Origin: Fimbriosthenelais zetlandica
Taxonomy: Eukaryota
Reading direction: 5' to 3'
Assembly: GCA_977030845.1 (NCBI GenBank)
Contig: OZ365113.1
Location: 34,596,001 to 34,660,000, forward strand
DNA length: 64,000 nucleotides
This document shows, one piece after another, positions 6,455 through 30,682 of this stretch; within the stretch, counting starts at the first letter, position 1, and every line of letters starts with the position of its first letter. A program made the position numbers and the translations under genes. A model generated the notes under the pieces. It saw only the letters and a program-made list of their open reading frames with translations. It had not been told where the DNA came from and ran no database searches.

Positions 6455-6510
6455 GGGTTGTGGGGGGGGGGGGGGGGGGGTAGGGGGATGGGGGGGGGGG
6501 GGGGAAGGGG
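6455..6510. repeat. Poly-G tract
   Basis: Runs of 19 G, 5 G and 14 G, visible directly. Confidence 0.8.
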
Positions 6511-9344: not shown

Positions 9345-9560
9345 TGCAGATTGGGACAATACCCTAGCAGATTGCAGTCCAGTTCCCTGCAGATTGAGTC
9401 CAGTCCTCATGCATCAGACTGGGCCCATTTGCCAGACAGTCCCCAGCAGATTAAGTCATGCTCCCAGCAGATAAGATCAAGCCCCCTGCAGATTAGGTAA
9501 TTTCCAGCAGATTAGGTCCAGTCCCCAGCAGATTGGGTCCATTCCCTAGCCGATAGGGCC
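9345..9560. repeat. ~21-bp degenerate minisatellite
   Basis: gcagatt(a/g)ggtccagtcccca-like units; gcagat recurs about every 21 nt, roughly 10 times. Confidence 0.8.
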
Positions 9561-12500
9561 TGAGTTGAGTTGACTCCATTTCCCTGAAGACCAGGCGTCT
9601 TCCTGTATGTACACTCTATTACGCACATTGGATATTGCATGTATATCATACATGGTATGCTTGACAATGTGGCAAAATCTGTTGAAGATTCCATAATAGT
9701 GAATCCCAGCCCACTTGCCTATAATAAGGAGTATGGGTTCTTATTCAAGCTGTATACTTAGTGGGGAAGGTGTGGAGGAAGCCTCAGGGGAACACTGAAA
9801 CCTCTTACAGGAAGGGTGGCTAGAACAATAGACCTTACACTCTCTCAGTTGCTTTACGAGTGCAAAGAGGCCAGAAAATAACAGGTAACACTAAAACAGT
9901 GATCTCTTGCTCACTCACTGAGGCAGAGTAATGGCTAATTTGGCTGAGTAGGTGGATATATGTGCTGATTCCACCTGAATGTCTTATATCTTATCAGTCA
10001 TTTCATTCTGATTCCTTTCTCGTAGGAAGAGTAGAGGATATGAGCATTTTCGGCATCGACGTGATCTAATAGTAATGCTGCTTGTGGGGAGTATATTAGA
10101 ACTGCAGAATCGCAGAATTGGAAAAATTATATGATAGAGAACATCTCTCATTGATATCGAGAGTTAGTATTGTCCACAATTCCAAGATAATATGATGTGA
10201 TATTTCTTAAAGAAAAACTGGATTACAAGCATGTCTTCATAAAATATTCTAAACTCTGGTCGCACCCATAGAACAAATGACCATGATTAAGTCTAACCAA
10301 TGATGAATGACATAAAACATTATAATGATGATGGATGGACCGAGGGCAAATCCTTTTGTAAATATTCTTTTGGCTAAAAAGGAACTCCATCTCATTGGGA
10401 GAGCTTGAACTTTTTCAGGCACTTCTCATTTTGATCCCGGCTAATGTAGCATGGTGGGGTAATGCTCTTGAATGAAATGAGAAGTGTGGTCAGGATGGAA
10501 GGGGCAACTCTGTGATCTAGTCTCAATCACTCGCGGGTATTAATCCTCAACAAGAAATCCTCCCATGTCTCACGCTTGTTGATTCGGAACTACACAGTTC
10601 TTGGTAAAACTATCCCAAGGCGAAGGAAGCCGGACTATTTCTGGACATCATTTCATGAAATACAAAAACCGGTTTCTGCTTAAAAACCTGTTTCTGACTT
10701 CATTAAAATGATGGAAGCTTTGAAAAAAATGAGGAGAAAATCCTGACGTCTCAATGAAGGTAGGAACTAGTTGCAATACATGTATTGTGAATTTGATTCA
10801 AACAATTAGGGAAATTGCTATAGGGAGAAAGTGGTTCCAGCATGTTGTTAGATTTATCTGAATATGGCCATTCTACCGTGAGAAAATTGTTAAAATAAAG
10901 ACCTTTAGGAGTAATTGTCCCAACAATTGGGAAAACGCCCTTTGGTCATTATGGGAATATATACCCCTTATCACACTCCCACAAAGTCTGTATGATCGTC
11001 GTCTATCTGAGGCCCAGCTCCCTCAGAAATCACCGATTTATTCTTAAGTCCACTGAGCCATGAAACCTTACTCCAGTCTTTGCTTCTTCCGTCCTAAAAC
11101 TAGGCCCCTGGGCAGGTCGTCTTAAACCTGTCGGGAATAGCCTAATCAGATTAAAATCTTCCGCGGTGATATAGAGGAATAAATGAGGCAAAAACAGCAT
11201 TCTTAGACCATCTCAATTAGGAACGCTTCAGGATGAAGGCTAGAGAAAAAGGAGGGGAGGTATGCATTGGGGACTGCCTGGTGGAAGGCATATAACGATG
11301 TTGGTCTAAAAAAGGTTTTCAGACTCCTTATAGTCAGCCGATGGCGCTAGCAACTCGCCTTATCAACACAGGTTCTGACCCCAACTTCCGGTGCCACTTC
11401 CGGTCTGCGGCAGGCAGTGAATCGCTGTGAGAACAATTAGAGACCGTTTTGCTCCATGCTCCCATTACCCGGAAGCGGAAGCAGTCACGATGGACAAGTC
11501 CCGCAGAAAGAGGAGACAGCAGGTCCGCAGCTACAAGCCGACATTGGCCCGGGCCTTGTCACGTTCATTAAAGTTTAGCTAGGGTAAATTCTAATCTGTG
11601 TGGAGAAGGGATGGGCTGGGTGGAGTCGGGATCTACCGCTAGGATGAGCGTGTGTGTACCCTTCTGGGCAGAGGATCCACGTCTTGGATTACCCAGGCCT
11701 GCGAGTCGTGCGCGGGGTCAGCAGGTCGCAGCAGGTGGCTTGGATTTGGTGAATTTGACTGAGATAAATGAGAAATGGGAGGTTCAGGAGCCTGATAGAT
11801 GCTCGCCAGGTTCATGTGGGCCCTGAGTTGAGGTCAACAGTGGAAAGGGCCAGCAGCCTGGGCTGTATTGTGCATTTAATATGGGGCTGGGAAAGTGAGA
11901 GCTAGGTGCCAGCACTCTATGTCATGCCAATGCAATTAATGGTGCAGGCCAGCTATGGGCTAAAGGATAAAACTAATGGATTTTCTCCTAAGCTGGAAGG
12001 GTAGGGAGCCATATACAGGTACAGCTAGGAGATGGTGGAAGAGGCTATAGTGAATAAAAGGGCGCATAAAGACCAAAACAAGAACACATGTATTATATTA
12101 TGATATTATACACTTATTCACTGGGATACGTTTTCAATTCATTTTTTTTGTATATGACAGTTTGGGTTCTACTGTCCCACAGCAAAAGGCTCTCATTTTA
12201 TTTAACTTGAATTATTCTTAAGCTTAAATGAGGCGTTTCGAAAATTTCAGGGAGATGGCTCCCTTCAAGACAAGAGTGTCTCATATCAGATCTTTGTCGA
12301 TCAATCTTTAATTTCCGACCATACCTCTTATCTAAAGAAATGATAATTCCACTCGTTGAGCCTAGCCTTATCACCGCCAACACCTGATAGCCTATCATGT
12401 GTGGAAGTCATTCAGCCTTTCATTTCTTTCACCTAACTTTAGCATCGTCCGTGTAAAAAGCACTAGGCCTTTGTTTGCCCGATGGCTTGGAAAAAGCCCA

Positions 12501-15500
12501 AAGGAGTAAGGAGAGAGGCACAAAGGATTTCTTATATAAAGGAACTCCATTTTGAATATTGTGACGGGTCACGTCAGCTAAGAATGCCATAAGGAAGCTA
12601 CTACCATTGAGGCATGGTATTCCATATGAGTTACCTTGGTACTGTCGCTGTAGTAAAACACAATCAGACGAGTGTTGTAGACACTGGTAGGACGACAGTG
12701 TTTGCCCTCCTCACTCACAACGACAGATCAATGTCTTGAGATAAAATTCATACAAAGCAGTGGATGTAATCAATAGCGCCATTTTGTCTGGCCGCGGCCT
12801 GTTTAAGCCCGCCATATTGTCCTCTTTATATACCGGGAGAAAAAGGAGATATTCACCCTTGACTAAACAGTGACTGGGATTTGTGGACCGCAGAACTCAG
12901 TGGTCCTTGTAGTGACAGCAGGACATAAGAAGTGCTGTCAAGCATTGTTTTTGTCTGCAAAAAAGGCCAGGCTTTTTGACAGAAAAGCACCTTTAACTAT
13001 TTACTTTTTCAACTATTAAAACTAATCTAAGCAACAAGGGCATGAAACAACATTTCTTTATACGTATTCAGTATACGATATAAATGCCCATTTATCATTT
13101 TAAATCTCGTTGAATTTGTTTTTAATACCAAGAAGCCACCTTTAAGAACCTGTCACGATTCAGCCATCATCCAGGGATCAGCTTTAGTTGGACACAGACT
13201 CAGAATTAAATTTAAACAGTATAAATGTTATCCCACTTGAACCTGAACTATACATTCCAGCAGACAAACTCTTCTTTAATATCACAAGATCGTGGTAGGA
13301 GGGTGTATACTGGAAACTATTGATCTACCCGTCTAAGGTACTTAGGCTGTGAGAAATTGTATGACCCTCCCAGTGCCCCTCTGATCCATGGGTATTATGT
13401 ATTTAGTCCAGTAGAGAGAAACACGAAGAGCAGCTCACGAGCTAGCCACAGAAAAGGTCTGACTCAATGCTTCTATATTTACGCCGTAGACTATAGCTTA
13501 CCCTGCACCGCTTTCGTTGGTTTAACCCGGTCTACTTGTGATATATAGGACTCAGGCACGTATGCAAAAACGTCCTGCTTACAATATCTGCCATTATTCT
13601 TCACCACCCATGCCATGTTGAAATAGATTGTTGGAGTGATTGGTGGCTAGGTCGAGAGACCAATATTGATGCAGTCTTTATATTCCAAGAGGGAGTACCA
13701 GCCTTTTCCACTGTTTTAATACCATCCCTCTCGTGAATTGATGGTGTTTCTAATCATCTGATAATGAGATAGAAAAAGTAATGTACCCACACAAAATCTG
13801 CCTGGTTTTCCTCCAAACAGACCATTCTCAAATATCACTTGAAAAGGTTAGAGACTGCTTTTGACCTGGAGATCTGCTCATGTTTTTGCAGAAATTCGAT
13901 AATGTCAAAAAACCAATAGGTTTAAAAGTTCCCAAATTACAGCCTTTTCTATTGAAAATAGTTCAGATGCAATTTGTTATTGACTTAACAATTCACATCG
14001 TTCGTGATGGGCCCAAGCTAAAAATAAAAGTCACTATTGTTGTTGGAGCCTAATGGAAAATGGTGCAGTCAAACCATGATGGTTTCTAGATAATTCATTT
14101 AAATTATTCTTCATGGCATGAAATGATGCACTGTTTAGATTCGGTCATGAAATCTGCTGCCAGGCAGCACCCTGGTTGGTCCACAATGCATAAGAATTAT
14201 TAAAACTCAAATTCCCAATAGAGTACTTGAACAATGCATCTTTAAATAGGGAACGCTGGATGAATAATGAATAAAATACACAGAGATGCTTGATAGTGAA
14301 ACCGTATTATATACACCAGGCACAATAGAATTAGATTTAAACACGCTCGTCCCATCTCTAAGTGGCATATCAGGGAAACAGGCGCACAATAAATGCTTAT
14401 TCTGCCACTATTATCAATAACTAGCGCCTCCTGTAAAAAGACGAGCCAGACTATAATTGTGACCATTAATCTGCTTACCAAGGACTAACCCCCTGACAAT
14501 CAGGGACCATTGGCGTTTTAATCCAGCCCTCAACCTCCAGCAAATAGAGTCCCCAATTTTGTGTTTCATTATAACGAGGATTTTACTATTTTTATGCTTC
14601 AACGCAAGGTCATACTATGCCTCCGATTGCCAGAATTGTAGTAGTTTTCCATTGTGTCACTGTTGGAGCCTTAGGCGTAGTTTACGAGCTGTTTCGAGGA
14701 ATATCGTATCAGGTTCCACAGCTGAGTATACACAGAGCAAATCGTGCTATTTATAGACCTATCATGCGCTTGCTCGCGAGCGAGCAAGAGCTTTGGAAAA
14801 AGAGCAATTGCAGCAGTTGGATGCAATGGCATTCTGCCTCAATAGACTCCACAATTCGGAGCAAAATTCAGGCCTTACATGCCATGTTGAAAAGACTTAA
14901 AATCCCCAAATGATAATTGGGTTGGGAGAGAATAAAGTCAGATGGTCTGGGAATATTTTAGTGCCCCGTAAACACTTGACGCGGATCCTGGTTGAAACTG
15001 GAGGCATTGAACCAGACAGAATGGGCAGCTGTAAAGGAGGAGGAGGAGCGGGGAGAGTGTGGGGATTTTATCATCAGATCTGACCATCGCCTGATTCTCC
15101 GCCATGGTGGAGAGCACGCCGTGTTGTCATCAGATTGACGCCTGATGACAGACGTGAACCAATTCTGTCCCTTCTCTCTTTCTTCATGCCCATCTCACAC
15201 CTTATGACCTTCATTCTGCATCATTTAACACAATGTGACTGCCTGGGGAAGGTTTCAGCCATGAATTAGCTCAACACTGTAAATCAGAGCAGCAGGAATT
15301 GGCAAGAGTTGGCCTATCCACAGTGTATCTATGGGCCTTGCAGCTCAATGCTTTGAGATAGGCTGCATCATGAAAGCCTATCTCAAAGCACTGAGCTGCA
15401 AGCACAGATGCAAGCCCATATATGCACAGTGGATAACGGCTATATCGCCCAGTGATATGGCTACATATGATAACTATAGATTGCCATGTAGAACTTTCAT

Positions 15501-18500
15501 CGAGCGGAAAAGGTGTTTAGGGATTAGAAGGATTAGAATGTAAGGGATTATAATGTAATAGAAGAACTGCAAAAGCAATGATTACATTTTAACTCATTGT
15601 CAAATTAGAAGCACTTCTGTTCAGACCAACAGATAGAACGGTAGAAATGGGCCAAATCGGTTGGTCTGTTGGCTTTGTCTGTGATAACATCCTCATTGTC
15701 TATTCGACCGGTGTGTTCCTGGCTTAAATATCCTGGATGACATTATGATCGCCTGTGATGGGCAATATATCATCTTCAATGTGAAGTCAATGTGAACACG
15801 GTACAGGTTGAATAAATGCCATCTATGATATATATTATGGATATGATGATATAATCGATTCACGGTAGAATATCCCAAACCTGCCTGAAAAACCTGATGG
15901 CTGATTTATAGCTCTGTTATTTGGATCCCAATTTCGTAGCGTCCCTGCAGCATCAATCAAAGCCAATTGCATTTTTCCTTCCATCCAATATTGTTCTTGA
16001 AAGATGGCAAATTATTCTCTAAATGAGAAGGAATATCAATTTCAATGCTTAGAATGAAATTCTTAGTGAACATTGTCATTCCATCGGTCCGCTTAATAGG
16101 TCTGTAAATTGTATAATGATGCCTTCAAGGTGAATGTTGTAGTCGCAAGAATAAGTCTCAAGGACTGTATGAAAGATTTATTATGTTGGACCCGTGGTGT
16201 GGAACAAACAGCCCCGGGGAATGGGCCCCCATTACTGATGTATTCTCTTTCAAAAAAGCAAATTACGAAACAGCGATGGTGAATATCCAATGAAGAATAT
16301 GATTATCTATCATACTCATCTCTTCCCTTTAAGACTCATTTCCCTTTGTGTTTCACACTGTAATTCCCTAATGAATTAGTCTAATTACATTGGATGTCTT
16401 TTACCTTCACAGAGCATGTAATTTCCCGGCCCCACTCGCCAGGTAATTGTTAATATTGAGGCACTTGAGGCTGTACTTGCCATTGTTAAATATATTACTC
16501 CACTTGGCCTCATATTATTTATGGTGTTGCAGCATGAGCTTCCCGAATGCTTCCGAGTCTTATTTTGGTGTTGTTGAGTCATGTTAATATTGTGATTTAT
16601 TTCAAAATGAAAGCGAAGAAAACTCATGATTATCTGGTTCAATGGATTGCCATGGGATTTCAAGATTTCAAGCTGAAAGGTCTTATCTCAAATGCCATAC
16701 ACATTGTTCCATATGGCCTTGTGAAATAATCCCGCATATAAATTAACTTCTGTTTGAAATTCATAATTCCCACTAGCAATCAATCCTGTTTTATTGAAAT
16801 CCATTAAAAATCAGATGGAGTAGAGGAACGCCGGCGTTTTGCCCTCTTTAGGTTATTTACTATGGAAGTAATGTATGTGGGACATTATGGAAGGGAAAGG
16901 ACGAGACAGGCAGGTGGCACGTGAAAGGTGCCTTCATCTGTATGCTAAACCAGCAGGCACTAAACAAATGAACGGTGACTGTGCCAGAGCGAATGTCAAA
17001 CCATCTTGAGAGTGCCTGTCTTTGGGCGTTCCTCCAAATAACACCTCTGTCCCTGCTTCATTAGCACTGATTAATTGATCATGGACAGATTGCACACTGA
17101 CTCCATTATCTTGCTGGGATAAGAGATGCAGCAATATTTAATTATCTCCCAGATGTAAGGTTTAGGGAGTCTTTGAGGAAGCTGATCCATCCTCAACAAA
17201 ACCTTCCCCTGCTTTGCTGCAGATGTCTGTGTTACTTTTAAGCCTTTTTAGTCCTCATTTTGTAATTATATTGAGACTTAAATGTAGTGAGGCCAAATCC
17301 TTCCAATCCTAATCCTAAATTCTTATCACTCATCTTCATCTTGTGTGGTGAATAAGGAAGGTAAGGAATGGCTGAGTAACAACAGGAAATGTTCAGGAAA
17401 TGCTTAGGAGGATTTCCTATCTCCATAACATTTGTTTTGCCATTGAACAGGGTCTTAACATAACCAGGTGTCTGCATCTGAATTACCATGTTCCCATATG
17501 TTACCAAACAACAGTAACCAGCTTTCTCTACCGTATATAATACGCCTTCATCATTTTGGGTTAGCTCAAGAAAGATGTCCCCTGAAAGACCCCATGGAAT
17601 TACATGAAGCAAAAAAAAGACAATCAGATGGGGAAAACATCAGCATATGTACAGTACATGGCTTCTACCAAGACCCCATCCATCTACACCACTGCCACAT
17701 TCATTATTCTCAAATTCAGGTTGCACAGATGGGAATAGGCTTGTTCCTTACCACAGCACAGCTTCATGTACATATCACATTCTATTAATGAAGCCATCAA
17801 CAAGTAACTGTATCCATAATGTCCATAACACTATAGGTCTGAGCACATTTATCACCGGGCAACTAATTTGGTTAGACCTAAGAAGCAATACCCCTTATAA
17901 CTGAAGCATCTTAGGGTACTTGCAGCACCCGCACACCGCCCCTCCCCACCTCTCTAAGGTTTGGCCATGCCTTCTTTAATGCGCTATACTTGTGATAGAT
18001 GCTTTTACCGAGCACAGGACTCAGGAAACAAGATTAGCTTCAGCTAGCTTCTAGGAACAATCATACGCCTAACTGGTACATGGCTGAGAAGCATGCTGCG
18101 ACCGCCTCTCAATGCACCAAATACAAAGGAAGCGTGTTTTTACATGGGCGATGTGCCTTGCCAAGTGGGGCTCTTCAAAGAAGTGTAATTAACAGTCATA
18201 TTGCTTAATACTAAGCCCAGATAGCCCAGGCTGCGGTAGATATCAGAATGACAAACGCATGCAAGTCACGTAACTTTAACGCACATGCGTCACTTCATTC
18301 ACATTTGGACTTCAATGTTTATTGTCAAATAAAACATGCTTGATTGTTCCCAACTAAAACCTTGCACAGAATTTTCATTTTCATGCCAGGCAAATATTCT
18401 ATAATGGAGCAAAGTCCTCGTAGGCGAGCCGTGTACCAAAGTGTTGGACAAAGGCATTTCCGCGCTGCTATTTCTATACCACAATGAACGAAGCCAATGT

Positions 18501-19883
18501 GGCTTCATCAAGGAAAAATGGCTGGCATGGCTGCCTGGAGGGAGAGGGGTGACAGTGGACTAGTCGGCCAAGTATGGAGGTAATGCTTAGAGTAAACAAT
18601 CAGGGGATATTGTAGGCTATTTACATGGACTATGTTTATTCCCTGGTAAGCCTGGAATTAACTGTATGTCCCTGGAGAGCGGGCTGGTAAGGCTGGCTTC
18701 AGGCTAGCCGTGAGTTCACATCACTTATCCCGGGGACGACTTAATTACAGTTGAATTAGGGAATACATGCAGGCCTATAGGGAGACCTCTATACCGTGTG
18801 ACTGATACTCTACTTCATTGAGGGGATACGTGTCTAATTAAAACATCTCCTGTATCGTATCATATATAAAATACACCACCTAGAAACATTGATGAATAGC
18901 TTTTACCAAACACAGGTGGCTGCCAACTCGTATCTAATCACCGAAGTTATCCATCAAAAATGCTCCACACTGGTGGAACACAATCAAGTTGAAAGCATAT
19001 TGGGGTGACAAAGATTGGGCTAGATTAATGACCTCATTCTTTTACCGAGAGTAAACGGCTGGAATCTTTTGTTCCTGTAATCAAATAGGTCTACTTTAAT
19101 GCTATTTCCCCAGCTGCTGCAACGATGCTCTTGTGTCAAAACACCATAACCAGTTTTCTGCAAATGTGCTAAAAGCATTAGGTATGAAGGAAAGCATACT
19201 GCATGCATGAAGTAATTTGGTCCAGCAGCCATATGTGTTGATGTATAGGTTGCTGTGAATGATTACCACTTCATTTAGAGCCCCACCCCTTAATCTTTGC
19301 GCCCTTTTGCCTCCCACTATTAAATTAGCCCAGGAGTGAAAGCCTTGACATCCCGCCAGGCGTAAAATGCAACTGGGTGCAAAGATTAACGACCAATGAC
19401 TGTCAATGAACAAGCAATAACTTGCGGTGTTATTTCGAGCAAAATAACCTTCATTGAACACAATGGTCTTCCATTAAATATTACATAACCATGCTAATGG
19501 GTTCTTGTACTCTTATATAATATAGGCCTATGTTATAAGTCCTATGTTATTTGAGCATCATGTTGCATATATATGCGCAGAAGAACAAAATTCGAATCAT
19601 GAACATCAATTCTGTTCCATGAACCAACCAACAATACAATCATGCTGAATTCATATTAATTTCATCTGTATGCGAACACCAATGAGCAGGCCATTGAAAA
19701 ACAGCAAAGTCTTGTTCAGAAGGTTCCCTACTTTGCTGCATACAGAATAGAAGGTACTATTTCTGGGGGATTGTGCCCAGTTCTTATGGATCAAGATCTT
19801 TGGGCAACATCCTTGTATTGATTTCCCTGTCCTCTTTTTTCACCACCTATAAAGCAGGAAGACATTAATCAAAGGGAACTTAC

Positions 19884-20150
19884 CGCCTCGGGCGATCTTC
19901 CTTGCCCATGTTGCTTCTGGTAGTGGAGTCGGAGCCTATCCTTTATGTCTTGCAGGCATTGACAGTTGTCCTTGGGTACTTGGTATTTCTCCATCAACAA
20001 AAATCCCTCCCAGACCTCTTTAAGGTTGGTCACTTCTTCCAGAGTCAGTAGTGACCCCAGGCCCCCCTGGGCCGAGGCCCCACTGACCCTCCTCATGGGG
20101 CTGAGACGTTTAGGCGATGATAGGATATTTGAGGGATATCCTGTGGACAT
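19884..20150 (-). CDS. Orphan coding exon (89 aa) homologous to the N-terminal module of the dynamin-kinase gene; downstream exons not identified
   Basis: GCCACCATG Kozak start preceded by an in-frame stop, an upstream acceptor (tttgtctctag, about 20326), an open frame and a phase-0 gtaagt donor at 19883. Aligns ungapped with the exon at 22100-22297 (12/51 identities plus many conservative pairs). Confidence 0.55.
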
Positions 20151-20879
20151 GGTGGCCCACTTTTACTTTGCCTGCATCAAAGCCCACTTTGCCTACACCA
20201 CTTAGGGCTGCTGGGTTGGCCAGTGACTTGTTCCACGCGGCCGGGGCTCTCCTATCTACCGCCGATCTCTCCCACACAGGTTGAAGAAGAGGGAAGTAGA
20301 TTCTTGCTGACTTGACTATTTGGGCCTAGAGACAAAGATATTCACTGGCAACTGAGCTGATTTTAATTGCACTGATTAGCTGAAAGAAAACGGTCATAGA
20401 ATGTCAATGAAAGGGCTGTGTAACAAAGAGTCCTCTTCAAATGGCAACATCAATTGTGTTTGATTGCAAATGGGAGGATGAATCAATGCTAGCTCTGTTT
20501 ATATCTAACTAATTATCCCAGAGTCAAGAGCAATAAGTGCCATGGATTATACGATGGAAGAAAATGCCAAAGGAAGGCAATTTGTCTTAAATGCCACAAC
20601 GGTGACAACGGTATGATATAGATCAAGCATGGTAAAGCGTAACATGTGTATGACAGAATTACAAGGCCATATTTACCAGCAATAGTATGCGTGTCCTTCT
20701 TGTCGCTCCACACCTCAGATCTCTCTCCTTGAGGCTAATGTTTTTGTGCTGTCGTTAAACACAGAATGTAATATATTAACCATAAGCGACACTATGATAT
20801 TAAGCTAGTCAAGCAGGCCGTTTGTGTTAAGCCGGGGATGTGTGAGCAGTTCGCCCGAGCCACTCGCGCTCTACATCTT

Positions 20880-21500
20880 ACTCCAGATCCTATGCTTGGT
20901 GGTCGTGCTGATGAAGATGGAAGTCAGGCACAAATTCAGGCTTGCCTCTCTGTCTCATGCTGTCAAACCCAACCACTGTCCTTCCCCGAGTGACAAATGC
21001 CTGCCGTGTCACTAGATTGCCTTGGAAACCACAGCCTCTTGTCATCCGATAGTCTCAACTGTGGCGATGTCACATTGTTGTAGTCACTGCCTCTCTAATG
21101 AGTGCTTACGTCCCGGGTTTTCTCTGCAAGAGCCTCTGAGCCTCTCTGACCATGGAGTGTATAGTGAGCTGCTCAGACAGTTGTCCTCATTGTGAGGGTG
21201 GGAGGTAGACCACTGCTGCCACCCTGTGTCCAACATGCACACACTAATACATAAGGGTTTGGAGGAGTGTGTCTGGAGTGTTAACCCTGCACGATCCTAG
21301 GCCTGCCAGCAGTCCCACCCAGCAATATTGAAGCCAGCTTCTGCTGCTGCTGTTGCTGCCAGGACTCAGCTAGCTTCCCAGCTGCTGCTTGTGCGGCATC
21401 TGTTGTGGGAGAGCAGGTTGGTTGAGCATATAGCGGAGAGCAGCGCTGGATAGAGGGCAATGCAGGCACACTGCCACCATGGCAGATTGTTGTCCTCCTA
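20880..21500 (-). mobile_element. Decayed non-LTR retrotransposon (LINE) fragment, APE-endonuclease region
   Basis: Minus-strand translations across stops and frameshifts give KLASILLG, VAAVVYLPP, GSDYNNV (GDFN-like) and FVTRGRT (TRG..TLD-like) in the order expected for LINE ORF2 endonucleases. No RT motifs were found. Confidence 0.5.
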
Positions 21501-21819
21501 CCCACAACTCTGTAAGCTTACTTCCCTCCTTCAAGAGCAGCTGCTGGAGCAGATGGAGAGCAGATGGATAAACCCAGCAGCAGCCACTGCAAAATGGTTG
21601 GAGAGCAGACAAATCGATAATGTCCAGAAAGGAACCCAACATGCGTGTCTCTTGCGTGTCCCATTCATAGTCTTTAGTACAAAAATCTCCTATAAGGTCA
21701 TGGCAATCAGACCATCCGTCCGGAAAGCCAAAACCTGTTACATTTTAAACCTTTCCTCTGATATTTATGATTTATTCTATGATTAGTTTTACACGAGCAT
21801 GAGAAGCCATGGGTGAGCC

Positions 21820-22110
21820 GCTTCCGGACGGTAGTGAGCCGTGTCGTCTGCAAGTGGCTTCCCCATCGTCAGGCCTTGGCGGGAAGAAGTGACGGTAGCC
21901 GCTTCATCCAACTGCTGCTAACAAAAGCAGCCGTCCCTTATATCAGTGACAGTGTGGAGGATATCAGAAGGAAAACCCACCCCCGACTGCTATATTAAAG
22001 GCAGAACAACAGCCCAAACATCCACACACCTTCCTGTTTCCGGTCACATCTGGACCCCCCCAGTTCTGCTTCCAATGTTGCAGGAAACTGCTCAAAAAGA
22101 TGGCTGCTCC
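21820..22110. promoter_or_regulatory. Putative promoter of the dynamin-kinase gene, possibly bidirectional
   Basis: ETS-type cores (gcttccgg near 21827, tttccggt near 22038) and an AAGATGGCTGC YY1-like motif overlapping the ATG at 22100. Confidence 0.4.
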
Positions 22111-25100
22111 ACGATGTGGCGATGCGGGCCTTACAGAGGACAGTGTTAATGAGATCACAGATCTATTCCAGGCCTTCCAATGGATACAGAAGCTGGATAT
22201 CAATCCCTCAGGGATTACAGATATAGAAGGAGCCAAATGCAGGCTGCTGCAATATCTCCAGGAACAATATGGTGCTGGAAAACACCAACGTGCAGACGTA
22301 AGTTCACTCTGACACCATTACTACTACATCTTACTTCACAATCGCCATGTCACAATATCCCATCAAGGCCATCGCTTACATGTTCTCTCTCATTTCCTAC
22401 TGTAAACATCAAAACATATCAACACCAATATACCCACCACACTTTATATATAGATTGAGGAAGCAGGCCAGACTATTTGTCATTGTACAGTAGTGGCTTC
22501 CATATCGGTGTAAATATAGAAGCCATTATATATATAGAACCCAGCGGGGTATTTAAAGGTGCTGAATATAGCTCTCCTGATGCACATTAATGCAACAGAC
22601 AGGAACTATACTGGGGTATCCTAACGATTGGATGAACATAAAATCTCAATTTTATGGGATCTAGGGATTTTCAATTTCACAGATTTTTGTCTTTTAGTTA
22701 AGGCTGAACCAGATTTATCACATTGAACGTGATTGGTGATGCAATTAGCCTTCAATATGCCTGACCAATGGTAGGCTTTCCAATTCTTAGTAATATGTAT
22801 TATAAATTGAATGATTCGGGCACATAATGGTAGAAACCATATTATATTAATGGGATAATGATCAAGGTTTTTGGGGATACCATTTTATTGGCTGTCACAT
22901 GTTCCAACCCGGTGAGTCGACTGTTGCTGTCAATGGTAGTGTCAGACAAGGGGGCGGCCATCTTGGATTTAGTACCAGACATTGCCCTCAGCGTCTCTCT
23001 CATCGTGCAGATCGTCTGAAGAACTTGCCGCCTGTGAAGCCAATTAATCACGGAATAATGTCAAATCTATGCCCAGCTACAGTTGCATTGTCACATGCCA
23101 GGAAAATGTTTTATGATTCAGTTCTATTCAGAGTTACATGAATTCAAATCCCATTGTCTGGCTTCAGGTAGAAGCCATCTGGTTTGAACTGATCGTTCAT
23201 ATCACTTTTCATATACTACTGATGATAATAGTGGTAATAATAGTGAAACCAAATTCTGCCAATTATTTTCCTATGATTTGTGTAATTGCTTGAATCTTCA
23301 GTCTCGTTAGAAAAGGTTTATTCCCATAGATTATGAGCCCTACTACATTGACATAATGGGTTATTTCTCTATAGTTTTCCATCGGTTTGGAAATGCTTTG
23401 AGTGATTTCGCATTATCTCAACTCTCCCCACTCTCTCGACAGTATTCTTCCATGAACTTTCCCTTATACATTGTGGAAAGTTCAGTAATAAAACCCATAT
23501 ATAATGATGGTCGAGAGTGAGATGTGGGTTACGCATTAAGATGTCATCCTCATCCTCCCGTCATGTTTAATATGACACCATGTCTTTAGCCCCGTTAAAG
23601 CGACATCTCTGCTCTTATCACGAAGCAAAAATAGAAAAAAACCTGACAACCTCTCAGTTTTAACGTCACTCTGCCTTATCTGACATGACCTGGAATCCAG
23701 GAGAGCTTAAAAATAGAACAATATGTGCCTCCGAAAACTTTGACATGATTACTTGTCGAAAGATGAATTGGAAGGTGTTTTTCAATGTGGCGGCAGGGAT
23801 TCTAAGCCTGGCCTTGTCTGATGGCTTTATTTTTTCTCTCACATGAACACGGTGCCTCGTTTTACTCGGCAGGTGTCCGCCATAATGAAGGAAGTCCTGG
23901 ACAAAGACCGCCAGCTGCGCACGCAACTCATTGACCTTTATAGACAGGTGGAGACCTACGTCATTCAACTTCCGGTGTCGCGGAGAAAAGAGCTGGAGCA
24001 GAGTATTCCCGCGGTGGGTCAACAGATCCACGACAATGTCTGTAACCTGGAGCGGAGCGACTGTCACATATTAGTCGCCGGTAATTAGCATGTTTTAATT
24101 GGAAACTTATCTATGGCTAAAATATTAATGAGTGTCCCGTAAAAATGAATAAATATTCGATTGTTTAACATAATAAAGATGATGCTTCTCTGCTTTATAT
24201 ATTTGATAACTGGTAAAGACTTATTATACATACATAGGCTTTTAAAATAACATAGTGAAAAGATCAATTTGAGACATTTTCTAGGACATAATAGTCTGGG
24301 AAGGTCTTGTTTCCTTTAAAGCAATTTTCTTATGAATGAGCTGCTCAGGTGGAAGACAGAGCTCCATATCTTTATATGAGGTAAATATTAGAATACTGTG
24401 TAGATCTTTGAAGAGAGACGATCAGTGTCTGTGATTTCTTTCCTGACAGGTGAAGTATCTGCTGGCAAGTCGAGCCTGCTAAATTTAATCCTGGGAATAG
24501 ATTTATTACCTACCTCCCTGCTCAGCTGTACATCAACCATCTGTGAACTGAGGTAAGTCTCTTTTCTATCTCTTTCTCTCTCTCTCTCCCTCTCCCTAAA
24601 CCTACCCCTCGATCCCTCTCTCACTCAATCCACCCCTTCCTGTCTCTTTCCCATTTCTCTCCCTGTAGCTCCCTCCCACTATCTGTGTGTGTGCCTCTCT
24701 CTCCCGCCCCTCCATGTTTCTTTATTCTCAGGTGGCAGGATAAGGATCCCCTTTGCACTTTCATAGCGTGACTTCTGACTTTCCCTTGCGTGATCCCGAG
24801 TCACATGTCCCTCTGTTGTTTCTTTCTTTCTCAATTTTCTTATGAAGTTGGGTTCGGTTTACCCTTATCACAGGCTTGCAGTGGCAGTGGCATATTTTGC
24901 CTTGGGCAGCAAGATTTCTTACGAAGCAGCATACATGTTGCACCTTTGAATTCCCCTAAATTGGGATTCCCCAGACACAAAAACATACATTACATGGTCT
25001 TGGTTAGACTCCGCTAGATATCTTTTGATACTTCCTGTTGAAATGAACACATATTTAGCAGACCTAACCTACATTATATGGTAACTAATCTAATTATCTA

Positions 25101-28100
25101 TATATATCTATAGACATATGACCTGGGTCAATTAAATATCCTACTAATTTTGATTTTTATCTCACAGATATGCCTCTTCCAAGTATGCTTTGGCATATTC
25201 TGTGGATGCCAACCAACCCGCAGAAAGAGTGTCTCTGGACTCGGGCGATCCTGCTGAAATCTTAGCCAACTATGTTCATCACAGAGGCGACAGACTTTCT
25301 AAATTCCCATACAAGCGTGTCGAGATCTACTGGCCATTCCCTCTCCTACAGGTAACCATTTATATAGGACTCATTTCATAATATAAAATATGAGAATAGA
25401 TTATGAAACGGGCAAAGGATCACCTGTGAAAATGGGGACTGGGTTCTATTGATTTTCCTCTGGATGCAGCCCTGAGTTGACAACAGACCCCAAATAGGCT
25501 TAGTGGACTATGTTAAGTTAATCATCTAATATAATGTTGTACAGGGTGGAATCGTGATCGTAGACAGCCCTGGTATCGGGGAGAGCCGGGATATGACACG
25601 GGTCGTCAAGGAGTTCCTACCATCAGCCTTCGCCTTCATCTATGTTATCAATAGCAGCAATGCTGGCGGTCTCCAACCAGACCGGGTAAGTACATGATAC
25701 AACATTAACATGATCAATAGAATATGATAATTTAGCCTCGGGCGTTTTTCGCAGTTTTCCCACAGACATAACATGAGAGGATCAAACTAAAAAACGGACC
25801 CCTAGCTCGTAAAAATATACTAAACTAATGGTCTTCTGGTTTTCAGCTTCAAGATTTACTGGCTCAAATTAGCCGTCAAAATGACGATAACTCCGCCTTC
25901 AACCCCCGGTCGGCCATCTTTGTTTGTAACAAGTGGGACCTTGTGCCCCTGGAGGAAGTGGATCAAGTGAGGAATGACACATGCGCAAAGCTGCGCTCCT
26001 GCTGGAGTGGCGTTCATTCTTCACAGATTTTTGAAATGTCAACCACCAAGGTGAGGTTAAAGGTTATTTTTAGGGTTCATAGATGCCCTGGAAAATCCTG
26101 AGAGGCCCTGGAAAACAAGTCAGACTCATGAAAAAAGATTTGGACCTTGATCTTGGAAAAATTCAATTATGTGATGGAAATGCCCTGGAATTGTGGTTCC
26201 TCTGACACTACGAACCCTGTCCTTAATTCACAGATCATTACCCCTTGTTAAATTGTATGATTGTGTTCCAATTAATGATATTTTTACAGATAATCTTCAA
26301 GAAATAGGACAGGTTATTACATGAGAAATCGTAATAACAATATATTACATTTGCACTGCTCTGATCAGTGAAGTTCTGTTTGCTTTCAGGCCAGTAAATC
26401 ATTGAAGGAATCAGATTACGTCACTCAGGATCTGGCTCATTTACTAGAAGGCATAGAGGCTCTGCTTCCAATCAGCCTCAGATGCAAGCTGGAGGTCCAC
26501 TACAGGTAAAGGAAACATTATATTATGTACCTGAGGTTGAATATCTCACCTTAAATGCATCTGTCCCTTGTTGATGTGTCCCTGCTCAATTTGACCTGAA
26601 AGTTCTGAAACCCTTTGACTTTCTTGAAACTTAGTACATTCATAATAGTTAAATTTATTCCAGCAAATAGCTGATTTCAGTATAACTATTGGAGTATGCA
26701 TATTTAGGGGGAGGGGAGTTCGCTTGGTTAGTTAGAGATTTAGGGGGTTGCCATTTAGGGTTGGCGCGGTTCAATCCCCGACCTGTCCAAAGCATTTTCA
26801 CGGCCTCCTTCTTCAGGGTGTTGGAAACGTTGAACTTTTATACATTCTATTTTCACCTTCAAAATGTCATTATAATTGTAGATGGTTAATCCAGCTGCTT
26901 CGCCGCTCGGCCTTCTACCTTCGCGTCCACATTGCTAACGAGACGCGTTCTGACGAGGAACGGAAGGAACTGACGGAACATCTCACCAACCAGCTCGACC
27001 GACTTCACACCGAGGCTAACCGGGTCATGGCGGAACTGAAGGCCGAGGTGTACGAGCGTGCGCAGAAAGCCTGCGACGATCTCATAGCACACCTGGATGC
27101 GCCTGCTACAAGGGCTAGGCTGCTGCTATGGCAGGTAATATTGCATCCATGTTTTCCTTTGACATGCATGCATAGAACTTGGTATCGTTGAATTTATTTT
27201 TTAAATGTGCTAGAATTTTGAGAACAAGCCCAGAGAAATTGACTTGTGATATTTTAAGGTAAATACATATTACTTGAAACACATGAAATGAACATTGCAC
27301 TGTAAATTTAGGGATGACCTAATAGGATGAATGTGATTTCATTTAATAAACGTTAAGAAATACATACTTGAAATTGCTCATGGCCTCAATTGCCTCTCTA
27401 ATTGCTAATGATTATATTTGGCGAATATAGAATGATCGTGTCGCTATAAAACCAGCAGTGGGAACTTGTTTAGCGTTGACAATAGGTGACTTTGATCTGT
27501 GGGCGTGTGATTTCATTGTACAGGAGAGTGAATGCCCTGATGGCAGTGACTGGGAGGCACTCCAAGAGCTGCTCATCGCCAAGGTCAATAAGAGAATCAG
27601 ACGCGAGGTCAATGACTGGGATCAGAGGAACGGGGTCTTCCAGGTAAATAGTTCATCCCTTCTCACAACATTGCTTTTTTATGGGAGGTATTTGGGAGGT
27701 GTGTGGCGGGGGAGTTCATATTACGGATAGAAAACCTCGTTAATCTGCCAGTGTATTTCCAGTTAAGCCTGCTGTAACTATGCATTGCTGTTTGCTACTA
27801 ACAATTAGCACTGTATTTCAAATTTCATTCATTTTGTTTCAACATTTGGTTCTAAATGCATGCCCATTTACTGCTGCAAAATGTATTGCTCTATCAGAAA
27901 TTAATGCATTCTCATTGAAGGAGCATTTTGCTCGATCACATGCCATGCATGAGAGATTGTTACATCGATGTCTCATTATATTCACTAGGAGATTCAGATG
28001 AGCATGCTCCACAAGTTCCAACAGGAGTTTGAGCTAATGGAGGACCAACTGGGCGTCATTGAGGGTAACATGATCGGCTCCCGTTGTTCGAGAATTGACA

Positions 28101-30682
28101 CCCACGCCGCGCTGCGACAAATGCACCTCCAGCAGCGACCCAATCTCACCACAGGTCAAAAAATAGCACTTGGTATGGCTGCCCCCATCCTTCTCCCACT
28201 CGGGGTGGTTGCCGGATTTTTTGTTCTTCCAGTTGCCGGCGTTCGAGCGATAAGGAACAAACTAAGTGAGATGAAACTACTGAAAAGTTACAGAGAAAAC
28301 AAAGAGAAAACCTTAACCACAATGACTCAGGAGATATTGGACAGTTTCATTGAAAAGAGTGCACTCTCTCGTCTGATTAGGGAACAATTGCAGGTCGTGA
28401 CTGCCAACATGGAAACAATGCTTTCCAGTATACCTAACATTGTAGCTGCAGATCGAATACTCATAGAACGGTTACAAAACGAAAGGAACCAATCAGAGGT
28501 TGCCTTAGCTGAACAACTATTACCCATGTATCAAAAATGCATTGAGCACCAAGGAAGACTAGATTTATTTTATGCCGAAAAGATTAGGACTTATGATGTG
28601 GATATGGCGGATTTACAGTGGGATCCCTCTAGGCCACCTATTGCCTCAGGCACTTTTGGTGATGTTTACGCCGGACTGTGGAAAAATGGAAATGATAATG
28701 AAATACCCGTGGCTGTAAAGTTACGCAGAGAAGTGCTGGACCAAAGCAATATTACTGAGCTATTGATAGAGGAAGAAAACCTGAAGTAAGTTCACTTTTG
28801 TTACATCCAAGCTCCCATAATGAATGTTTCAGAGAACACAGACTTGACGGTTTTATTTTGTGACTAGTGTCTATATTATTGCTTTTGAAGGACCCACGGT
28901 CTTGTATTTGTGAAGGACCTTAGGTCCTGTATTTGGGAAGGCCAATAGGTTCTGTATTTGGAAAAGACCTCAGGACCTCAGAACCTTGAGTAGGTTCTGT
29001 ATTTTGGAAAGGCCCTTAGGTCCTGTATTTGGAAAGGAGCTACCTTAGCTAAAAGATACAATTCAAAATCTTTTGGTAGGCCCCATACCAGTCCTGATCT
29101 AATCATTTTTCCTTTTTATACTTCAGGAGACTCCATCATGAAAATATAGTTAAATATTTTGGGACCTGCGCACGCAGACAGGAACCTGAAGGTCCCCTTC
29201 AGATCCTGATGTTAATGGAGAAATGTGAAAGCACTTTACGTGCACGTATCATCGGAAAGAAGGCCAAGAGCCCCGGTAAACTGGGCGACAACAAAGCCAT
29301 GATGCTCGAGGCACAAAGACGTGTACGCAGCTACTGCAGCCAGCTATGTGCAGCTTTAATGTACATGCACGAACGTGGCTTAGTACATAGGGATCTCAAA
29401 CCGCAAAATATACTGGTAAGGTTCTGATTATTTCTTCTAAAACTATGCATTCCATACATTAAATATAACATGGGTTGAAAATCATGAATATCGCGTTTTG
29501 TAAATGAAACGAAATATTTGATTTTCTGATCTGCACATAGAAAAATTGAAGTATTGTAGGTTAATTCATAGTTCTAATATATTTAGAATTTGTTGTGTTT
29601 TCAACAGTTAAATGTTGCCTTGCCTGCAGCTCATGAGATGCTAAGATTTCTTTGGTTTATTATTGTAATGGCTATATTCCACTTCAATGTTGTAGAAAAT
29701 GAGGTCAATGACCTAAGGGACCACCTATTGAAATTCAATGAAAGTAAGTTATTAACAAATCTGGAAATATTGCCTGTTAATTCACCATCTTTTATATGCA
29801 CCAATGAAGCCAAAGAAGTCTCAATCCAAGCTTTCTTTTGTCATCTGTAGAAAGGAGTCAAGAAATTGACGTTTGAGCAAATAGGTTACTAAGAAAAATC
29901 AATCATTATTCCCTTCGCCTACTCAGTGAAGTTATTGCCAACTCTAGACACCCCCCCCCCCCCCCAACCCTCCACCAGGTGACTCCAGATAGGCATTTTT
30001 CATTAGGTTTTGTTTTCAGAGGGAGTAGGCCTAAATACATTCTGCTAAAATCCGTTGCATTCCCTCACTCTCTTGCCACACACCCACTCTCACTATCGCA
30101 CCCATTCACTCGCTCAACACCATGGTATACCATCTCTCCAGAAGATTAAAATCTGTGAAATGTTATTTGTAGGTTAATTTTAAATCAACTGAAAGCCCAT
30201 GAAATACATTATGCTACACCTATTCAGTTCCATTCATACCTATATCATAAATATCCAAACTGTCTTAAAGGCTTTTCTCTCATCTTATTTCACAGCTGAA
30301 CAAACTTGAAGTGGTGAAGATAGCCGACGTGGGTTTAACCAAACCAGAGCGGGATATATCTGGAACTATCTGTGGTACCACTGCCTACTCCGCCCCAGAA
30401 GTCATGGAAGGCATTTCATATGACAAAGCAGCCGACATGTACAGTTTCGCCATTATCGCCTGGGAGTTATGGTACGGTAGGGGAGTGGGCGATGAAATTC
30501 TCTCCCTCCAGAAGGGGAACATTGAGACGGCCATCAGATCGGGAGCGAGGCCGAGATTCAGTGCGCATGCGCCGAGCACTGAATGGCGGGATGTGATTGA
30601 ACTGTGTTGGAACTGTGACCCAAGGAAAAGGTTGACTGCCAAGCAGTCGTACGACTACTTCACTAGCCTCAAAGATATATGA
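22100..30682 (+). CDS. Dynamin-like (mitofusin/BDLP-type) GTPase fused to a C-terminal protein kinase, DSTYK/Dusty-like architecture; 12 exons, 999 aa
   Basis: Exons with GT-AG ends and consistent phases: 22100-22297, 23873-24080, 24450-24552, 25168-25351, 25545-25685, 25847-26050, 26390-26505, 26882-27134, 27524-27643, 27989-28785, 29127-29415, 30296-30682 (sum 3000 nt). GTPase motifs: G1 GEVSAGKS, G2 region SCTSTICE, G3 DSPG, G4 NKWD. Kinase motifs: ASGTFGDVY, VAVK, HRDLKPQN, DVG, GTTAYSAPE, DMYSF. Linking exon 1 to exon 2 is inferred from matching phase-0 splice sites. Confidence 0.9.
28887..29037. repeat. ~25-bp degenerate tandem repeat in intron 10 of the dynamin-kinase gene
   Basis: gaaggaccttaggtcctgtatttgg-like unit, 5-6 copies. 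Confidence 0.8.

What the first reader, a model, noticed from the sequence alone, without database searches (positions are those of the whole stretch)
19884..22297. Head-to-head pair of genes sharing an unnamed ~50-aa N-terminal module
Seen: exons 20150-19884 (-) and 22100-22297 (+) diverge from a 1.95-kb spacer. LTLEEVTNLKEVWEGFLLMEKYQVPKDNCQCLQDIKDRLRLHYQKQHGQGR aligns without gaps to LTEDSVNEITDLFQAFQWIQKLDINPSGITDIEGAKCRLLQYLQEQYGAGK (12/51 identical, hydrophobic pattern kept), and both exons end in a phase-0 gtaagt donor at almost the same position. I cannot assign the module to a named family. Inference: it is an exon-shuffled homotypic interaction module, and the two genes are a co-regulated pair whose products associate through it, by analogy with head-to-head plant NLR pairs or death-fold adaptors.
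Basis: partly seen in the sequence, partly recalled or inferred. Interest (0 to 1): 0.72.

Follow-up and report, generated by a model that had tools for sequence, protein, structure and literature searches.

The report
Head-to-head paralogous GTPase-kinase gene pair
The two diverging exons are the first exons of two ancient, back-to-back duplicate genes for a dynamin-like GTPase fused to a kinase (one copy an apparently dead kinase), so the shared 50-residue piece is the family's own unnamed N-terminal domain and was not shuffled between unrelated genes.

Summary
Both exons, their ATGs, their phase-0 gtaagt donors and the gap-free alignment are there. The similarity is real: BLASTP E 1e-5, 0 of 40,000 shuffles reach it, and profile-profile E is 8.5e-13.

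The module is not exon-shuffled. Gene A (+, 22100-30682) and gene B (-) are full-length paralogs: module, helical exon, Dynamin_N GTPase, stalk with a hydrophobic hairpin, kinase. Gene B's exon 1 is 20150-19884. Its exon 2 lies about 62.3 kb downstream, outside the window, in the same phase and aligned position as A's exon 2. A compact genome (L020) shows the B-type module spliced, across a 134-nt intron, to B-type GTPase exons.

Every context found for the module is this one family. The head-to-head A/B layout recurs in four other organisms. B lacks the catalytic kinase residues (HRD to HME, DFG Asp to Asn), and the Asn is conserved in 8 orthologs.

The module has no Pfam or PDB sequence match. 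It is predicted as a three-helix unit with a weak SAP/HeH-like fold.

No RNA runs were listed, and the complex prediction gave no verdict. Co-regulation and association through the module are therefore untested. This is a solid annotation result of moderate interest.

The parts
19884..20150 (-). Exon 1 of gene B (B-type module exon): ATG at 20150, 34-residue Ser/Pro/Gly-rich lead, then the module; phase-0 donor
   Evidence: An 80%-identical ortholog lies in L009 with conservation confined to the exon. dN is 0.077 with dS saturated.
19884..20048 (-). B-type N-terminal module (55 aa): predicted helices at residues 3-7, 12-21 and 32-48
   Evidence: Alignments A2 and A6. AF2 model m917c66ebc20c, pLDDT 79.
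19878..19883 (-). GTAAGT splice donor of gene B exon 1
   Evidence: The donor is conserved as GTGAGT in L009. A 'VS' read-through follows the exon in all genomic ORF hits.
1..19877 (-). Proximal part of gene B intron 1 (about 62.3 kb in all, running on to C19:34553597, outside the window)
   Evidence: No conserved or coding-looking minus-strand exon here. Exon 2 was found at C19:34553596-34553380.
20151..22099 (.). 1,949-bp divergent spacer between the two start codons; presumed to hold both promoters
   Evidence: GC is 0.49 against about 0.41 around it, with no CpG enrichment. No block is conserved with the spacers of L009, L019, L020 or L021.
22100..22297 (+). Exon 1 of gene A (A-type module exon), phase-0 donor GTAAGT at 22298-22303
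   Evidence: Orthologs lie in L009 (67%), L019, L020 and L021.
22130..22294 (+). A-type N-terminal module (55 aa): predicted helices at residues 3-7, 12-21 and 32-47
   Evidence: Alignment A5. AF2 model m6d5dd0d9da40, pLDDT 84.
23873..24080 (+). Exon 2 of gene A: helical segment ending ...CHILVA|G; phase-0 acceptor, phase-1 donor
   Evidence: Gene B exon 2 has the same phases and the same aligned start.
24404..26098 (+). Gene A GTPase exons: P-loop GEVSAGKS (open frame 24404-24553), DSPG (25530-25694), NKWD (25829-26098)
   Evidence: Pfam Dynamin_N scores 39.2 bits against a cut-off of 27.
26900..28786 (+). Gene A stalk or coiled-coil exons, a hydrophobic hairpin, and the start of the kinase N-lobe (GTFGDVYAG, VAVK)
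29098..30682 (+). Gene A kinase exons (HRDLKPQN, DVG, APE) and the stop codon
   Evidence: Pfam Pkinase. The nearest solved kinases are of the TKL type: Roco4, TAK1, MLK.

Best explanation
The two exons are the first coding exons of two ancient, inverted (head-to-head) paralogous genes of one family. The family architecture is: N-terminal ~50-aa module, helical exon, dynamin-superfamily (Dynamin_N, mitofusin/BDLP-like) GTPase, helical stalk with a hydrophobic hairpin, and a TKL-type protein kinase.

Gene A (+ strand, 22100-30682) keeps all the kinase catalytic motifs. Gene B (- strand) starts at 20150-19884. It splices across an intron of about 62.3 kb to exon 2 at C19:34553596 and ends at C19:34540651. 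Its GTPase motifs are intact, but its kinase has lost the catalytic residues, so it is a pseudokinase.

The shared module was inherited by whole-gene duplication. It was not shuffled as an exon. It is the family's own N-terminal domain, predicted to fold alone as a small three-helix unit of the helix-extended loop-helix (SAP/HeH-like) type.

Inferred, not shown: it acts as an N-terminal docking or regulatory domain. The conserved divergent arrangement lets the active copy and the pseudokinase copy be expressed together and work as a hetero-oligomer, as paired dynamin-like proteins and kinase/pseudokinase pairs do.
For: - Homology of the modules: BLASTP E 1e-5; no shuffle reaches the score; hhalign E 8.5e-13; a gap-free 39-sequence alignment that splits into A and B clades with 98/97 support.
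- Whole-length paralogy: minus-strand copies of the GTPase, stalk and kinase exons lie at C19:34.5536-34.5407 Mb. Dynamin_N and Pkinase are hit for both genes.
- Same exon structure: exon 1 has a phase-0 donor; exon 2 has a phase-0 acceptor at the same aligned residue and a phase-1 donor after ...ILVA|G.
- Compact genome L020 (GCA_029979725.1): the B-type module exon, a 134-nt intron, and then exon 2 (AEEMIS...) and B-type GTPase exons 74-80% identical to gene B lie on one strand. The A-type module and A-type exons lie on the other strand.
- The same contigs carry the B-type module exon and the B last exon on one strand, 100.3 and 98.5 kb apart, in two other organisms.
- The own genome has exactly two module exons and two such GTPase genes.
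- Purifying selection on both module exons: dN 0.077 and 0.172 with dS saturated, and conserved donors.
- Head-to-head A/B pairs occur in L009/L010, L019, L020 and L021.
- Pseudokinase: HME replaces HRD, NLG replaces DFG, and there is no Gly-rich loop. Asn at the DFG Asp position is conserved in 8 orthologs.
- Fold: AF2 pLDDT 79 and 84 with identical helices. The top AFDB and Atlas matches are N-termini of Dynamin_N(+Pkinase) proteins. SAP, Rho_N, ARMET_C and LEM domains follow.
Against: - No transcript evidence: no sequencing run could be listed. The 62-kb splice in this genome is therefore inferred from phase, homology and other genomes.
- An in-frame ATG sits 6 nt upstream of the exon 2 acceptor (ATG TTG CAG | GCA), so a module-less B isoform from an internal start is possible.
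- The SAP-like fold rests on low scores (Z 4.5-5.6, Foldseek E about 1) that are usual for small helical units. No Pfam SAP hit was found.
- The domain may pack into the dynamin-like neck bundle and not stand alone.
- No conserved non-coding block lies in the spacer.
- The start codons are 1.95 kb apart, which is wide for a classical bidirectional promoter.
- Nothing tests hetero-oligomerisation.
Confidence: 0.85

Rival explanations
1. A mobile, exon-shuffled homotypic interaction module has been placed on two otherwise unrelated genes. Their products associate through it, like NLR pairs or death-fold adaptors.
For: The modules are homologous and sit on phase-0 bounded first exons. The genes are a conserved divergent pair.
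Against: The genes are paralogs over their full length. Every context found for the module is this one family. The own genome has only these two copies. The fold is three helices of about 48 aa with no death-fold match.
Confidence: 0.03
2. Exon m1 serves a separate transcript, either a short module-only protein or one spliced to unseen small exons inside the 62 kb. Gene B in this genome would then start at an internal promoter with the ATG just before exon 2.
For: An in-frame ATG lies 6 nt upstream of the exon 2 acceptor. The intron would be unusually long. There is no RNA evidence.
Against: The compact genome L020 joins the B-type module to B exon 2 at exactly the junction proposed here. The long separation on one strand recurs in two other organisms. 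A good polypyrimidine acceptor (tcctttatgttgcag) is in matching phase. No other conserved exon lies in 60 kb here or in 15 kb of L011.
Confidence: 0.08
3. The module is not an autonomous domain. It is the first helices of the dynamin-like neck or helical bundle (as in mitofusin HD1 or the dynamin BSE), so its conservation reflects intramolecular packing and not docking of a partner.
For: In mitofusin/BDLP-type proteins, helices N-terminal to the G domain form part of the neck bundle (established knowledge of the family). Exon 2 right after the module is a long helical segment.
Against: AF2 folds the 55 residues alone into the same compact unit for both paralogs, at pLDDT 79-84. A Gly/Ser/Pro-rich linker (GQGRSPEA, GAGKHQRAD) and the exon boundary separate it from exon 2. 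SAP-type domains dominate the fold matches.
Confidence: 0.2
4. Exon m1 is a decaying relic of a partial inverted duplication of the 5' end of gene A, and the similarity has no present function.
For: No downstream exon lies within the window.
Against: The ORF, ATG and donor are intact. It is 89% identical in the module to an ortholog although synonymous sites are saturated. At least 16 B-type representatives (clusters at 50% identity) exist in other assemblies.
Confidence: 0.01

Closest known systems
SAP / HeH (helix-extended loop-helix) domains, e.g. Tho1, Ku70, PIAS1, Hcc-1, the MANF/CDNF C-terminal domain, the Rho N-terminal domain, LEM
   Same: Predicted helix, ~10-residue extended loop, helix core of about 40 residues. 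VIA-align gives Z 4.5-5.4 with rmsd 1.6-1.8 A over 42-43 residues to several SAP domains. SAP, Rho_N, ARMET_C and RNF34 HeH recur in the AFDB, Swiss-Prot and Atlas searches. A-type modules have an invariant loop Gly followed by the helix start LEDAK-RL, which recalls the SAP G-K--L--RL pattern.
   Different: No sequence match to Pfam SAP in any of 39 members. There is an extra short N-terminal helix. The B-type usually has Asn instead of the loop Gly. The context is cytoplasmic and membrane-associated (GTPase-kinase), not nuclear. The scores are in the range that small helical units reach by chance.
Dynamin-superfamily GTPases of the mitofusin / bacterial DLP type, including paired adjacent DLP genes in bacteria
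   Same: Both genes carry Dynamin_N with intact G1, G3 and G4 motifs, a helical stalk and a hydrophobic hairpin. Two adjacent paralogs possibly work as a hetero-oligomer, as known for bacterial DLP pairs (established knowledge; analogy only).
   Different: They are fused to a C-terminal kinase or pseudokinase. They are eukaryotic genes with introns and probably cnidarian (Atlas taxa). They carry a family-specific N-terminal module. Pairing of the products is untested.
DSTYK (dual serine/threonine and tyrosine protein kinase, 'Dusty')
   Same: Lead from memory only: a ~900-1000-aa protein with a C-terminal divergent kinase and an N-terminal region whose sequence, as I recall it, resembles a degenerate version of the P-loop exon seen here. 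The literature describes DSTYK as a divergent kinase with a domain layout unlike the RIPKs (PMC10492769).
   Different: Not tested here. No named homolog was returned, and no paper linking DSTYK to dynamin-like GTPases was found. I do not recall the N-terminal module in the human DSTYK sequence.
Active kinase / pseudokinase paralog pairs and head-to-head paired immune genes (plant NLR pairs)
   Same: A conserved divergent orientation of two paralogs, one catalytically competent and one degenerate.
   Different: No death-fold, NB-ARC or LRR parts. No evidence yet for co-expression, physical association or immune function.

Membership tests
SAP domain (Pfam PF02037) | Significant sequence match to the SAP profile | tested here: not met
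   No SAP hit at E <= 1 for either exon or any of 39 members.
SAP domain (Pfam PF02037) | Helix-extended loop-helix fold of about 35-45 residues | tested here: inconclusive
   AF2 models have helices at 12-21 and 32-48 with a 10-residue loop. Z is 4.5-5.4 and rmsd 1.6-1.8 A to solved SAP domains, below the level that excludes chance.
SAP domain (Pfam PF02037) | Nucleic-acid (or defined partner) binding | not testable with these tools
   Needs biochemistry.
Dynamin superfamily (Pfam Dynamin_N PF00350) | G1 P-loop GxxxxGKS, G3 DxxG and G4 (N/T)KxD motifs, with a profile match above the cut-off | tested here: met
   Gene A has GEVSAGKS, DSPG and NKWD. Gene B has GETSSGKS, DSPG and NRWD. Dynamin_N scores 39.2 and 42.8 bits against a cut-off of 27.
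Active protein kinase (Pkinase PF00069) | Gly-rich loop, VAIK Lys, HRD Asp, catalytic Asn, DFG Asp | tested here: met
   Gene A has GTFGDVYAG, VAVK, HRDLKPQN and DVG.
Active protein kinase (Pkinase PF00069) | The same catalytic residues in gene B | tested here: not met
   The fold matches Pkinase, but HRD is HME, LKPQN is LSLDT, DFG is NLG, and there is no Gly loop. Asn at the DFG position is conserved in 8 orthologs. Gene B is a pseudokinase.
Exon-shuffled mobile module | The same module joined to different, unrelated domain architectures | tested here: not met
   All contexts recovered are Dynamin_N(+kinase) genes. The own genome has two copies, one per paralog. A search of 1.84 billion representatives gave about 37 real-looking hits, all as first-exon ORFs; the genes checked (5 loci) are all of this family.
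Death-fold (DD/CARD/PYD) homotypic adaptor | Six-helix bundle of about 85-95 residues | tested here: not met
   Three helices in 48 ordered residues. No death-fold entry appears in any fold-search list.
Bidirectional-promoter gene pair | Head-to-head orientation conserved across species | tested here: met
   L009/L010, L019, L020 and L021 have ATG-to-ATG spacers of about 1.8-7.8 kb.
Bidirectional-promoter gene pair | Transcription starts less than about 1 kb apart, and correlated expression | not testable with these tools
   No RNA runs could be listed. The start codons are 1,949 bp apart and the UTRs are unknown.
DSTYK family | Orthology to vertebrate DSTYK over the kinase and the N-terminal region | not tested
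   No DSTYK sequence was available through the tools. This is a lead from memory only.

The most novel reading that the evidence does not exclude
The conserved divergent pair encodes an obligate two-part machine. One part is a dynamin-like GTPase with an active kinase, and the other is its pseudokinase paralog. They would be co-expressed from a shared control region and assemble on membranes as a hetero-oligomer. The unnamed SAP-like N-terminal domains would act as the homotypic or partner-docking contacts. This would be a eukaryotic counterpart of bacterial DLP1/DLP2 pairs, wired to kinase signalling.
Probability: 0.2. Interest if true: 0.6.

Novelty: new variant of a known kind. Interest (0 to 1): 0.38.

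Why it matters
The result turns an apparent 'mystery module on two genes' into a clear gene model. It extends gene B across a 62-kb intron that automatic annotation could easily miss. It also defines a conserved, unnamed N-terminal domain of a little-studied animal family that joins a dynamin-like GTPase to a kinase.

One copy is a conserved pseudokinase, and the head-to-head layout has survived deep divergence. Together these give a concrete, testable hypothesis that the two proteins work together. If the family proves to be related to DSTYK, a human disease gene with a poorly understood N-terminal region, the intact invertebrate GTPase could help explain that region. That link is untested here.

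Tried and rejected
- RNA evidence: the look-up of sequencing runs on 19700-22400 (rna) and on 19884-20180 (any) listed no run (one earlier try was busy). Read laying could not be used.
- Complex prediction on the two modules: no verdict (score 0.02; the chains' own folds had pLDDT about 44). This is neither for nor against binding (first try busy).
- Named family: Pfam on the exons and on 39 members gave nothing. A PDB sequence profile gave nothing significant; the best hit was a 21-residue stretch of an RNA helicase A dsRBD at E 0.11, judged chance. Foldseek against PDB gave nothing at E <= 0.001.
- More copies in the own genome: searches with m1, p1 and the two-sequence profile found only the two exons. 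Weak window hits at 48452-48523 and 63274-63200 were judged noise.
- Gene B exons near m1: ORF lists and tblastx of 60 kb against L009/L011 found nothing. The exons were finally found with the GTPase exons as queries.
- Names for the family: two homologous-protein searches returned only unnamed ORF fragments. The Atlas gave only 'hypothetical protein', Cnidaria.
- DSTYK link: two literature searches found no paper on a dynamin-like domain in DSTYK. The Dusty kinase paper PMC4277547 is not held.
- Conserved non-coding elements in the spacer: none. CpG observed/expected is not raised.
- An EF-hand-like reading of 'LTEE..F' was considered and dropped. There is no Pfam support, and the predicted loop lacks the calcium-binding pattern.


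Full report
**Observation**

On the minus strand an ATG at 20150 opens 89 codons that end at 19884, directly before GTAAGT (19883-19878). On the plus strand an ATG at 22100 opens 66 codons that end at 22297, before GTAAGT (22298-22303). The start codons are 1,949 bp apart.

BLASTP aligns residues 35-89 of the first exon with residues 11-65 of the second, without gaps. It finds 13/55 identities, 25.4 bits, and E 1e-5 for the single comparison. The Smith-Waterman score is 61 against a shuffle mean of 22.4 (sd 4.2), and none of 2 x 20,000 shuffles reaches it. Among 430 six-frame ORFs of the window, each exon is the other's best non-self match. Both donors are phase 0 and sit one codon apart in the alignment.

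**The module is a conserved family with two branches**

I searched 1.84 billion representative proteins with a profile of the two sequences. This returned 41 hits. I took about 37 as real and fetched 38. All were short ORFs predicted on genomic contigs.

In all of them the similarity stops at the same place, and 'VS', 'VR' or 'VG' follows. That is the translation of a read-through GT(A/G)AG donor, so the exon boundary is conserved.

The 39 sequences align without internal gaps over 55 columns; two rows have a 1- or 3-residue gap near the C-terminal end. They split into two branches with 98/97 support:
- an A type, like the plus-strand exon (DLFxAF...G.t.LEdAKCRLL);
- a B type, like the minus-strand exon (EVWEGF.LM....v.K.NC..L.DIK.RLRLH).

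A profile-profile comparison of 19 A-type and 16 B-type sequences gives 97.8% probability and E 8.5e-13 over 53 columns.

Against the nearest other organism (L009), the B-type module is 49/55 identical and the A-type 40/55. Synonymous sites are saturated (dN 0.077 and 0.172), and the flanking introns have diverged (exon-limited conservation). Both exons are therefore under purifying selection.

**What the two genes are**

Downstream of the plus-strand exon lies a multi-exon gene, here called A:
- a helical exon at 23873-24080, ending ...CHILVA|G;
- GTPase exons with GEVSAGKS, DSPG and NKWD (Pfam Dynamin_N, 39.2 bits against a cut-off of 27);
- coiled-coil or stalk exons and a hydrophobic hairpin;
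- a kinase with GTFGDVYAG, VAVK, HRDLKPQN, DVG and APE.

Its nearest solved kinases are of the TKL type: Roco4, TAK1 and MLK.

Nothing comparable lies on the minus strand within the window, nor in 40 kb beyond it. Searching the whole genome with the GTPase exons found exactly one paralog, on the minus strand of the same chromosome. This is gene B, mapped exon by exon:
- exon 2 at C19:34553596-34553380 (AQEVIQ...CPILVA|G);
- a P-loop exon (GETSSGKS; Dynamin_N 42.8 bits);
- DSPG and NRWD exons;
- a 375-codon stalk and hairpin exon;
- two kinase exons ending at C19:34540651.

B's exon 2 has a good acceptor (tcctttatgttgcag) in phase 0, at the same aligned residue as A's exon 2, and the same phase-1 donor. 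Joining 19884 to it is in frame and gives an intron of about 62.3 kb.

**Proof from other genomes**

- **L020** (NCBI GCA_029979725.1, a 9.9-kb contig of a compact genome). The B-type module exon ends ...TIDA|gtaagt. After 134 nt comes tttcag|AEEMISTL..., the ortholog of B exon 2. B-type GTPase exons follow, 74-80% identical to gene B and only 51-67% identical to gene A. On the opposite strand, 1.9 kb away, lie the A-type module and A-type exons.
- **L009/L011 and L019 contigs.** The B-type module exon and the B last exon lie on one strand, 100.3 and 98.5 kb apart. The very long gene B is therefore not peculiar to this genome.
- **L012** (a more distant organism). A module that groups with the B side of the tree on a long branch is again followed by the helical exon and Dynamin_N exons.
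- **L021.** A compact gene A of about 4.5 kb lies head-to-head with a B-type module exon.

The divergent A/B arrangement is thus seen in four other organisms. Their B modules are 47-89% identical to this one. The own genome has two module exons for two genes.

The module was therefore inherited by duplication of the whole gene. I found no case of it on another architecture, so 'exon shuffling' is not supported.

**The pseudokinase**

Gene B keeps its GTPase motifs, but its kinase reads HME for HRD, LSLDT for LKPQN, and NLG for D(F/V)G, and it has no Gly-rich loop. Eight orthologous last exons, 48-91% identical, all have Asn in place of the DFG aspartate. B is an old, conserved pseudokinase, paired with a kinase that looks active.

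**The module's fold**

AlphaFold2 with the 39-sequence alignment gives the same three helices for both paralogs (3-7, 12-21, 32-47/48), at pLDDT 79 and 84.

The best AFDB-cluster matches are residues about 5-55 of an uncharacterised protein and of two 'Dynamin N-terminal domain-containing' proteins. By shape, the ESM Atlas returns a cluster of 1017-aa proteins with Pkinase (100%) and Dynamin_N (98%), mostly from Cnidaria, at TM 0.74 and rmsd 1.2 A over residues 1-48.

Beyond relatives, the lists are dominated by helix-extended loop-helix domains. These include SAP domains of Hcc-1, E1B-AP5, Tho1, Ku70, PIAS1, MKL1, SLX4 and FAN1, the MANF/CDNF C-terminal domain, the Rho N-terminal domain, the emerin LEM domain and the RNF34 HeH domain. 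Their Z values of 4.5-5.6 are within what small helical units reach by chance. No member hits Pfam SAP. I therefore call the fold SAP/HeH-like and do not file the module as a SAP domain. No death-fold protein appears in any list.

**How it most likely works**

Shown:
- two full-length paralogs in conserved divergent orientation;
- a conserved, selected N-terminal domain specific to the family;
- one paralog is a pseudokinase.

Inferred:
- The module is an autonomous docking or regulatory domain, set off by a Gly/Ser/Pro-rich linker and an exon boundary.
- The pair is kept together because the two products act together. Shared regulation from the spacer is plausible, and so is hetero-oligomerisation through the G domains, stalks or N-domains.

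The main rival for the module's role is that it packs into the dynamin-like neck bundle. Whether the two modules bind each other is open, because the complex prediction gave no verdict. No RNA run could be listed, so the 62-kb splice, the transcription starts and co-expression remain untested in this organism. An in-frame ATG 6 nt before B's exon 2 leaves room for a module-less isoform.

**Comparison with what is known, and verdict**

The genes belong to the dynamin superfamily by their G domain, and to the protein kinases by their C-terminal domain. Gene B meets the kinase fold but not the catalytic residues.

A relation to vertebrate DSTYK is a lead from memory that I could not test. The searches returned no named homologs, and the literature held here does not link DSTYK to dynamin-like GTPases.

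My results agree and add the paralog.

The finding is real but more ordinary than proposed. It is a divergent pair of ancient paralogs sharing their family's own N-terminal domain. The new points are the unnamed SAP-like domain, the conserved active/pseudokinase pairing, and the 62-kb first intron of gene B.

Noticed in passing
outside the window: G000 C19:34540651-34541613 (L016:4651-5613, minus strand): The kinase domain of gene B is degenerate (HME for HRD, NLG for DFG, no Gly-rich loop). Asn at the DFG Asp position is conserved in 8 orthologous exons from other assemblies. It is an old pseudokinase paired with an active-looking paralog.
   Followed up: yes
window 1-19877 and on to C19:34553597: Intron 1 of gene B is about 62.3 kb. 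In two other organisms the B module exon and the B last exon are about 100 kb apart. In the compact genome L020 the same intron is 134 nt. Gene A stays compact (8.6 kb here, about 4.5 kb in L021).
   Followed up: partly
L012:7150-8097 (+): In that organism the start of the DTPG (G3) exon of the family's GTPase is embedded in a tandem array of about seven 113-bp repeats. Each repeat carries an acceptor-like stretch and the codons GVTFVDTPGIGES.
   Followed up: no
window 33218-34720 (+): Exons of a PdxS/SNZ-type pyridoxal-5'-phosphate synthase ([27 protein letters not shown]...; ...[12 protein letters not shown]). Most bilaterian animals lack this enzyme. It fits the cnidarian signal from the ESM Atlas taxa.
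   Followed up: no
window about 44400-50541 (-): A kinesin gene: motor-domain exon ([12 protein letters not shown]...VDLAGSERA) at 50278-50541 and an FHA-like exon at 47517-47915. This suggests a kinesin-3 type.
   Followed up: no
window 62640-63092: A minisatellite of 18-bp units that is open in both strands (PSIRTM.../GHCPDT... repeats).
   Followed up: no
L019:3676-4140 (-): A reverse-transcriptase (RVT_1) fragment is inserted in the A/B spacer of that organism. This helps explain its 7.8-kb spacer, against 1.8-3.3 kb elsewhere.
   Followed up: no
window 24404-24553 (+): From memory only: the P-loop exon (GEVSAGKSSLLNLILGIDLLPTS) resembles a degenerate stretch in the N-terminal region of human DSTYK. 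If so, DSTYK would be a pseudo-GTPase relative of this family. Not tested.
   Followed up: no
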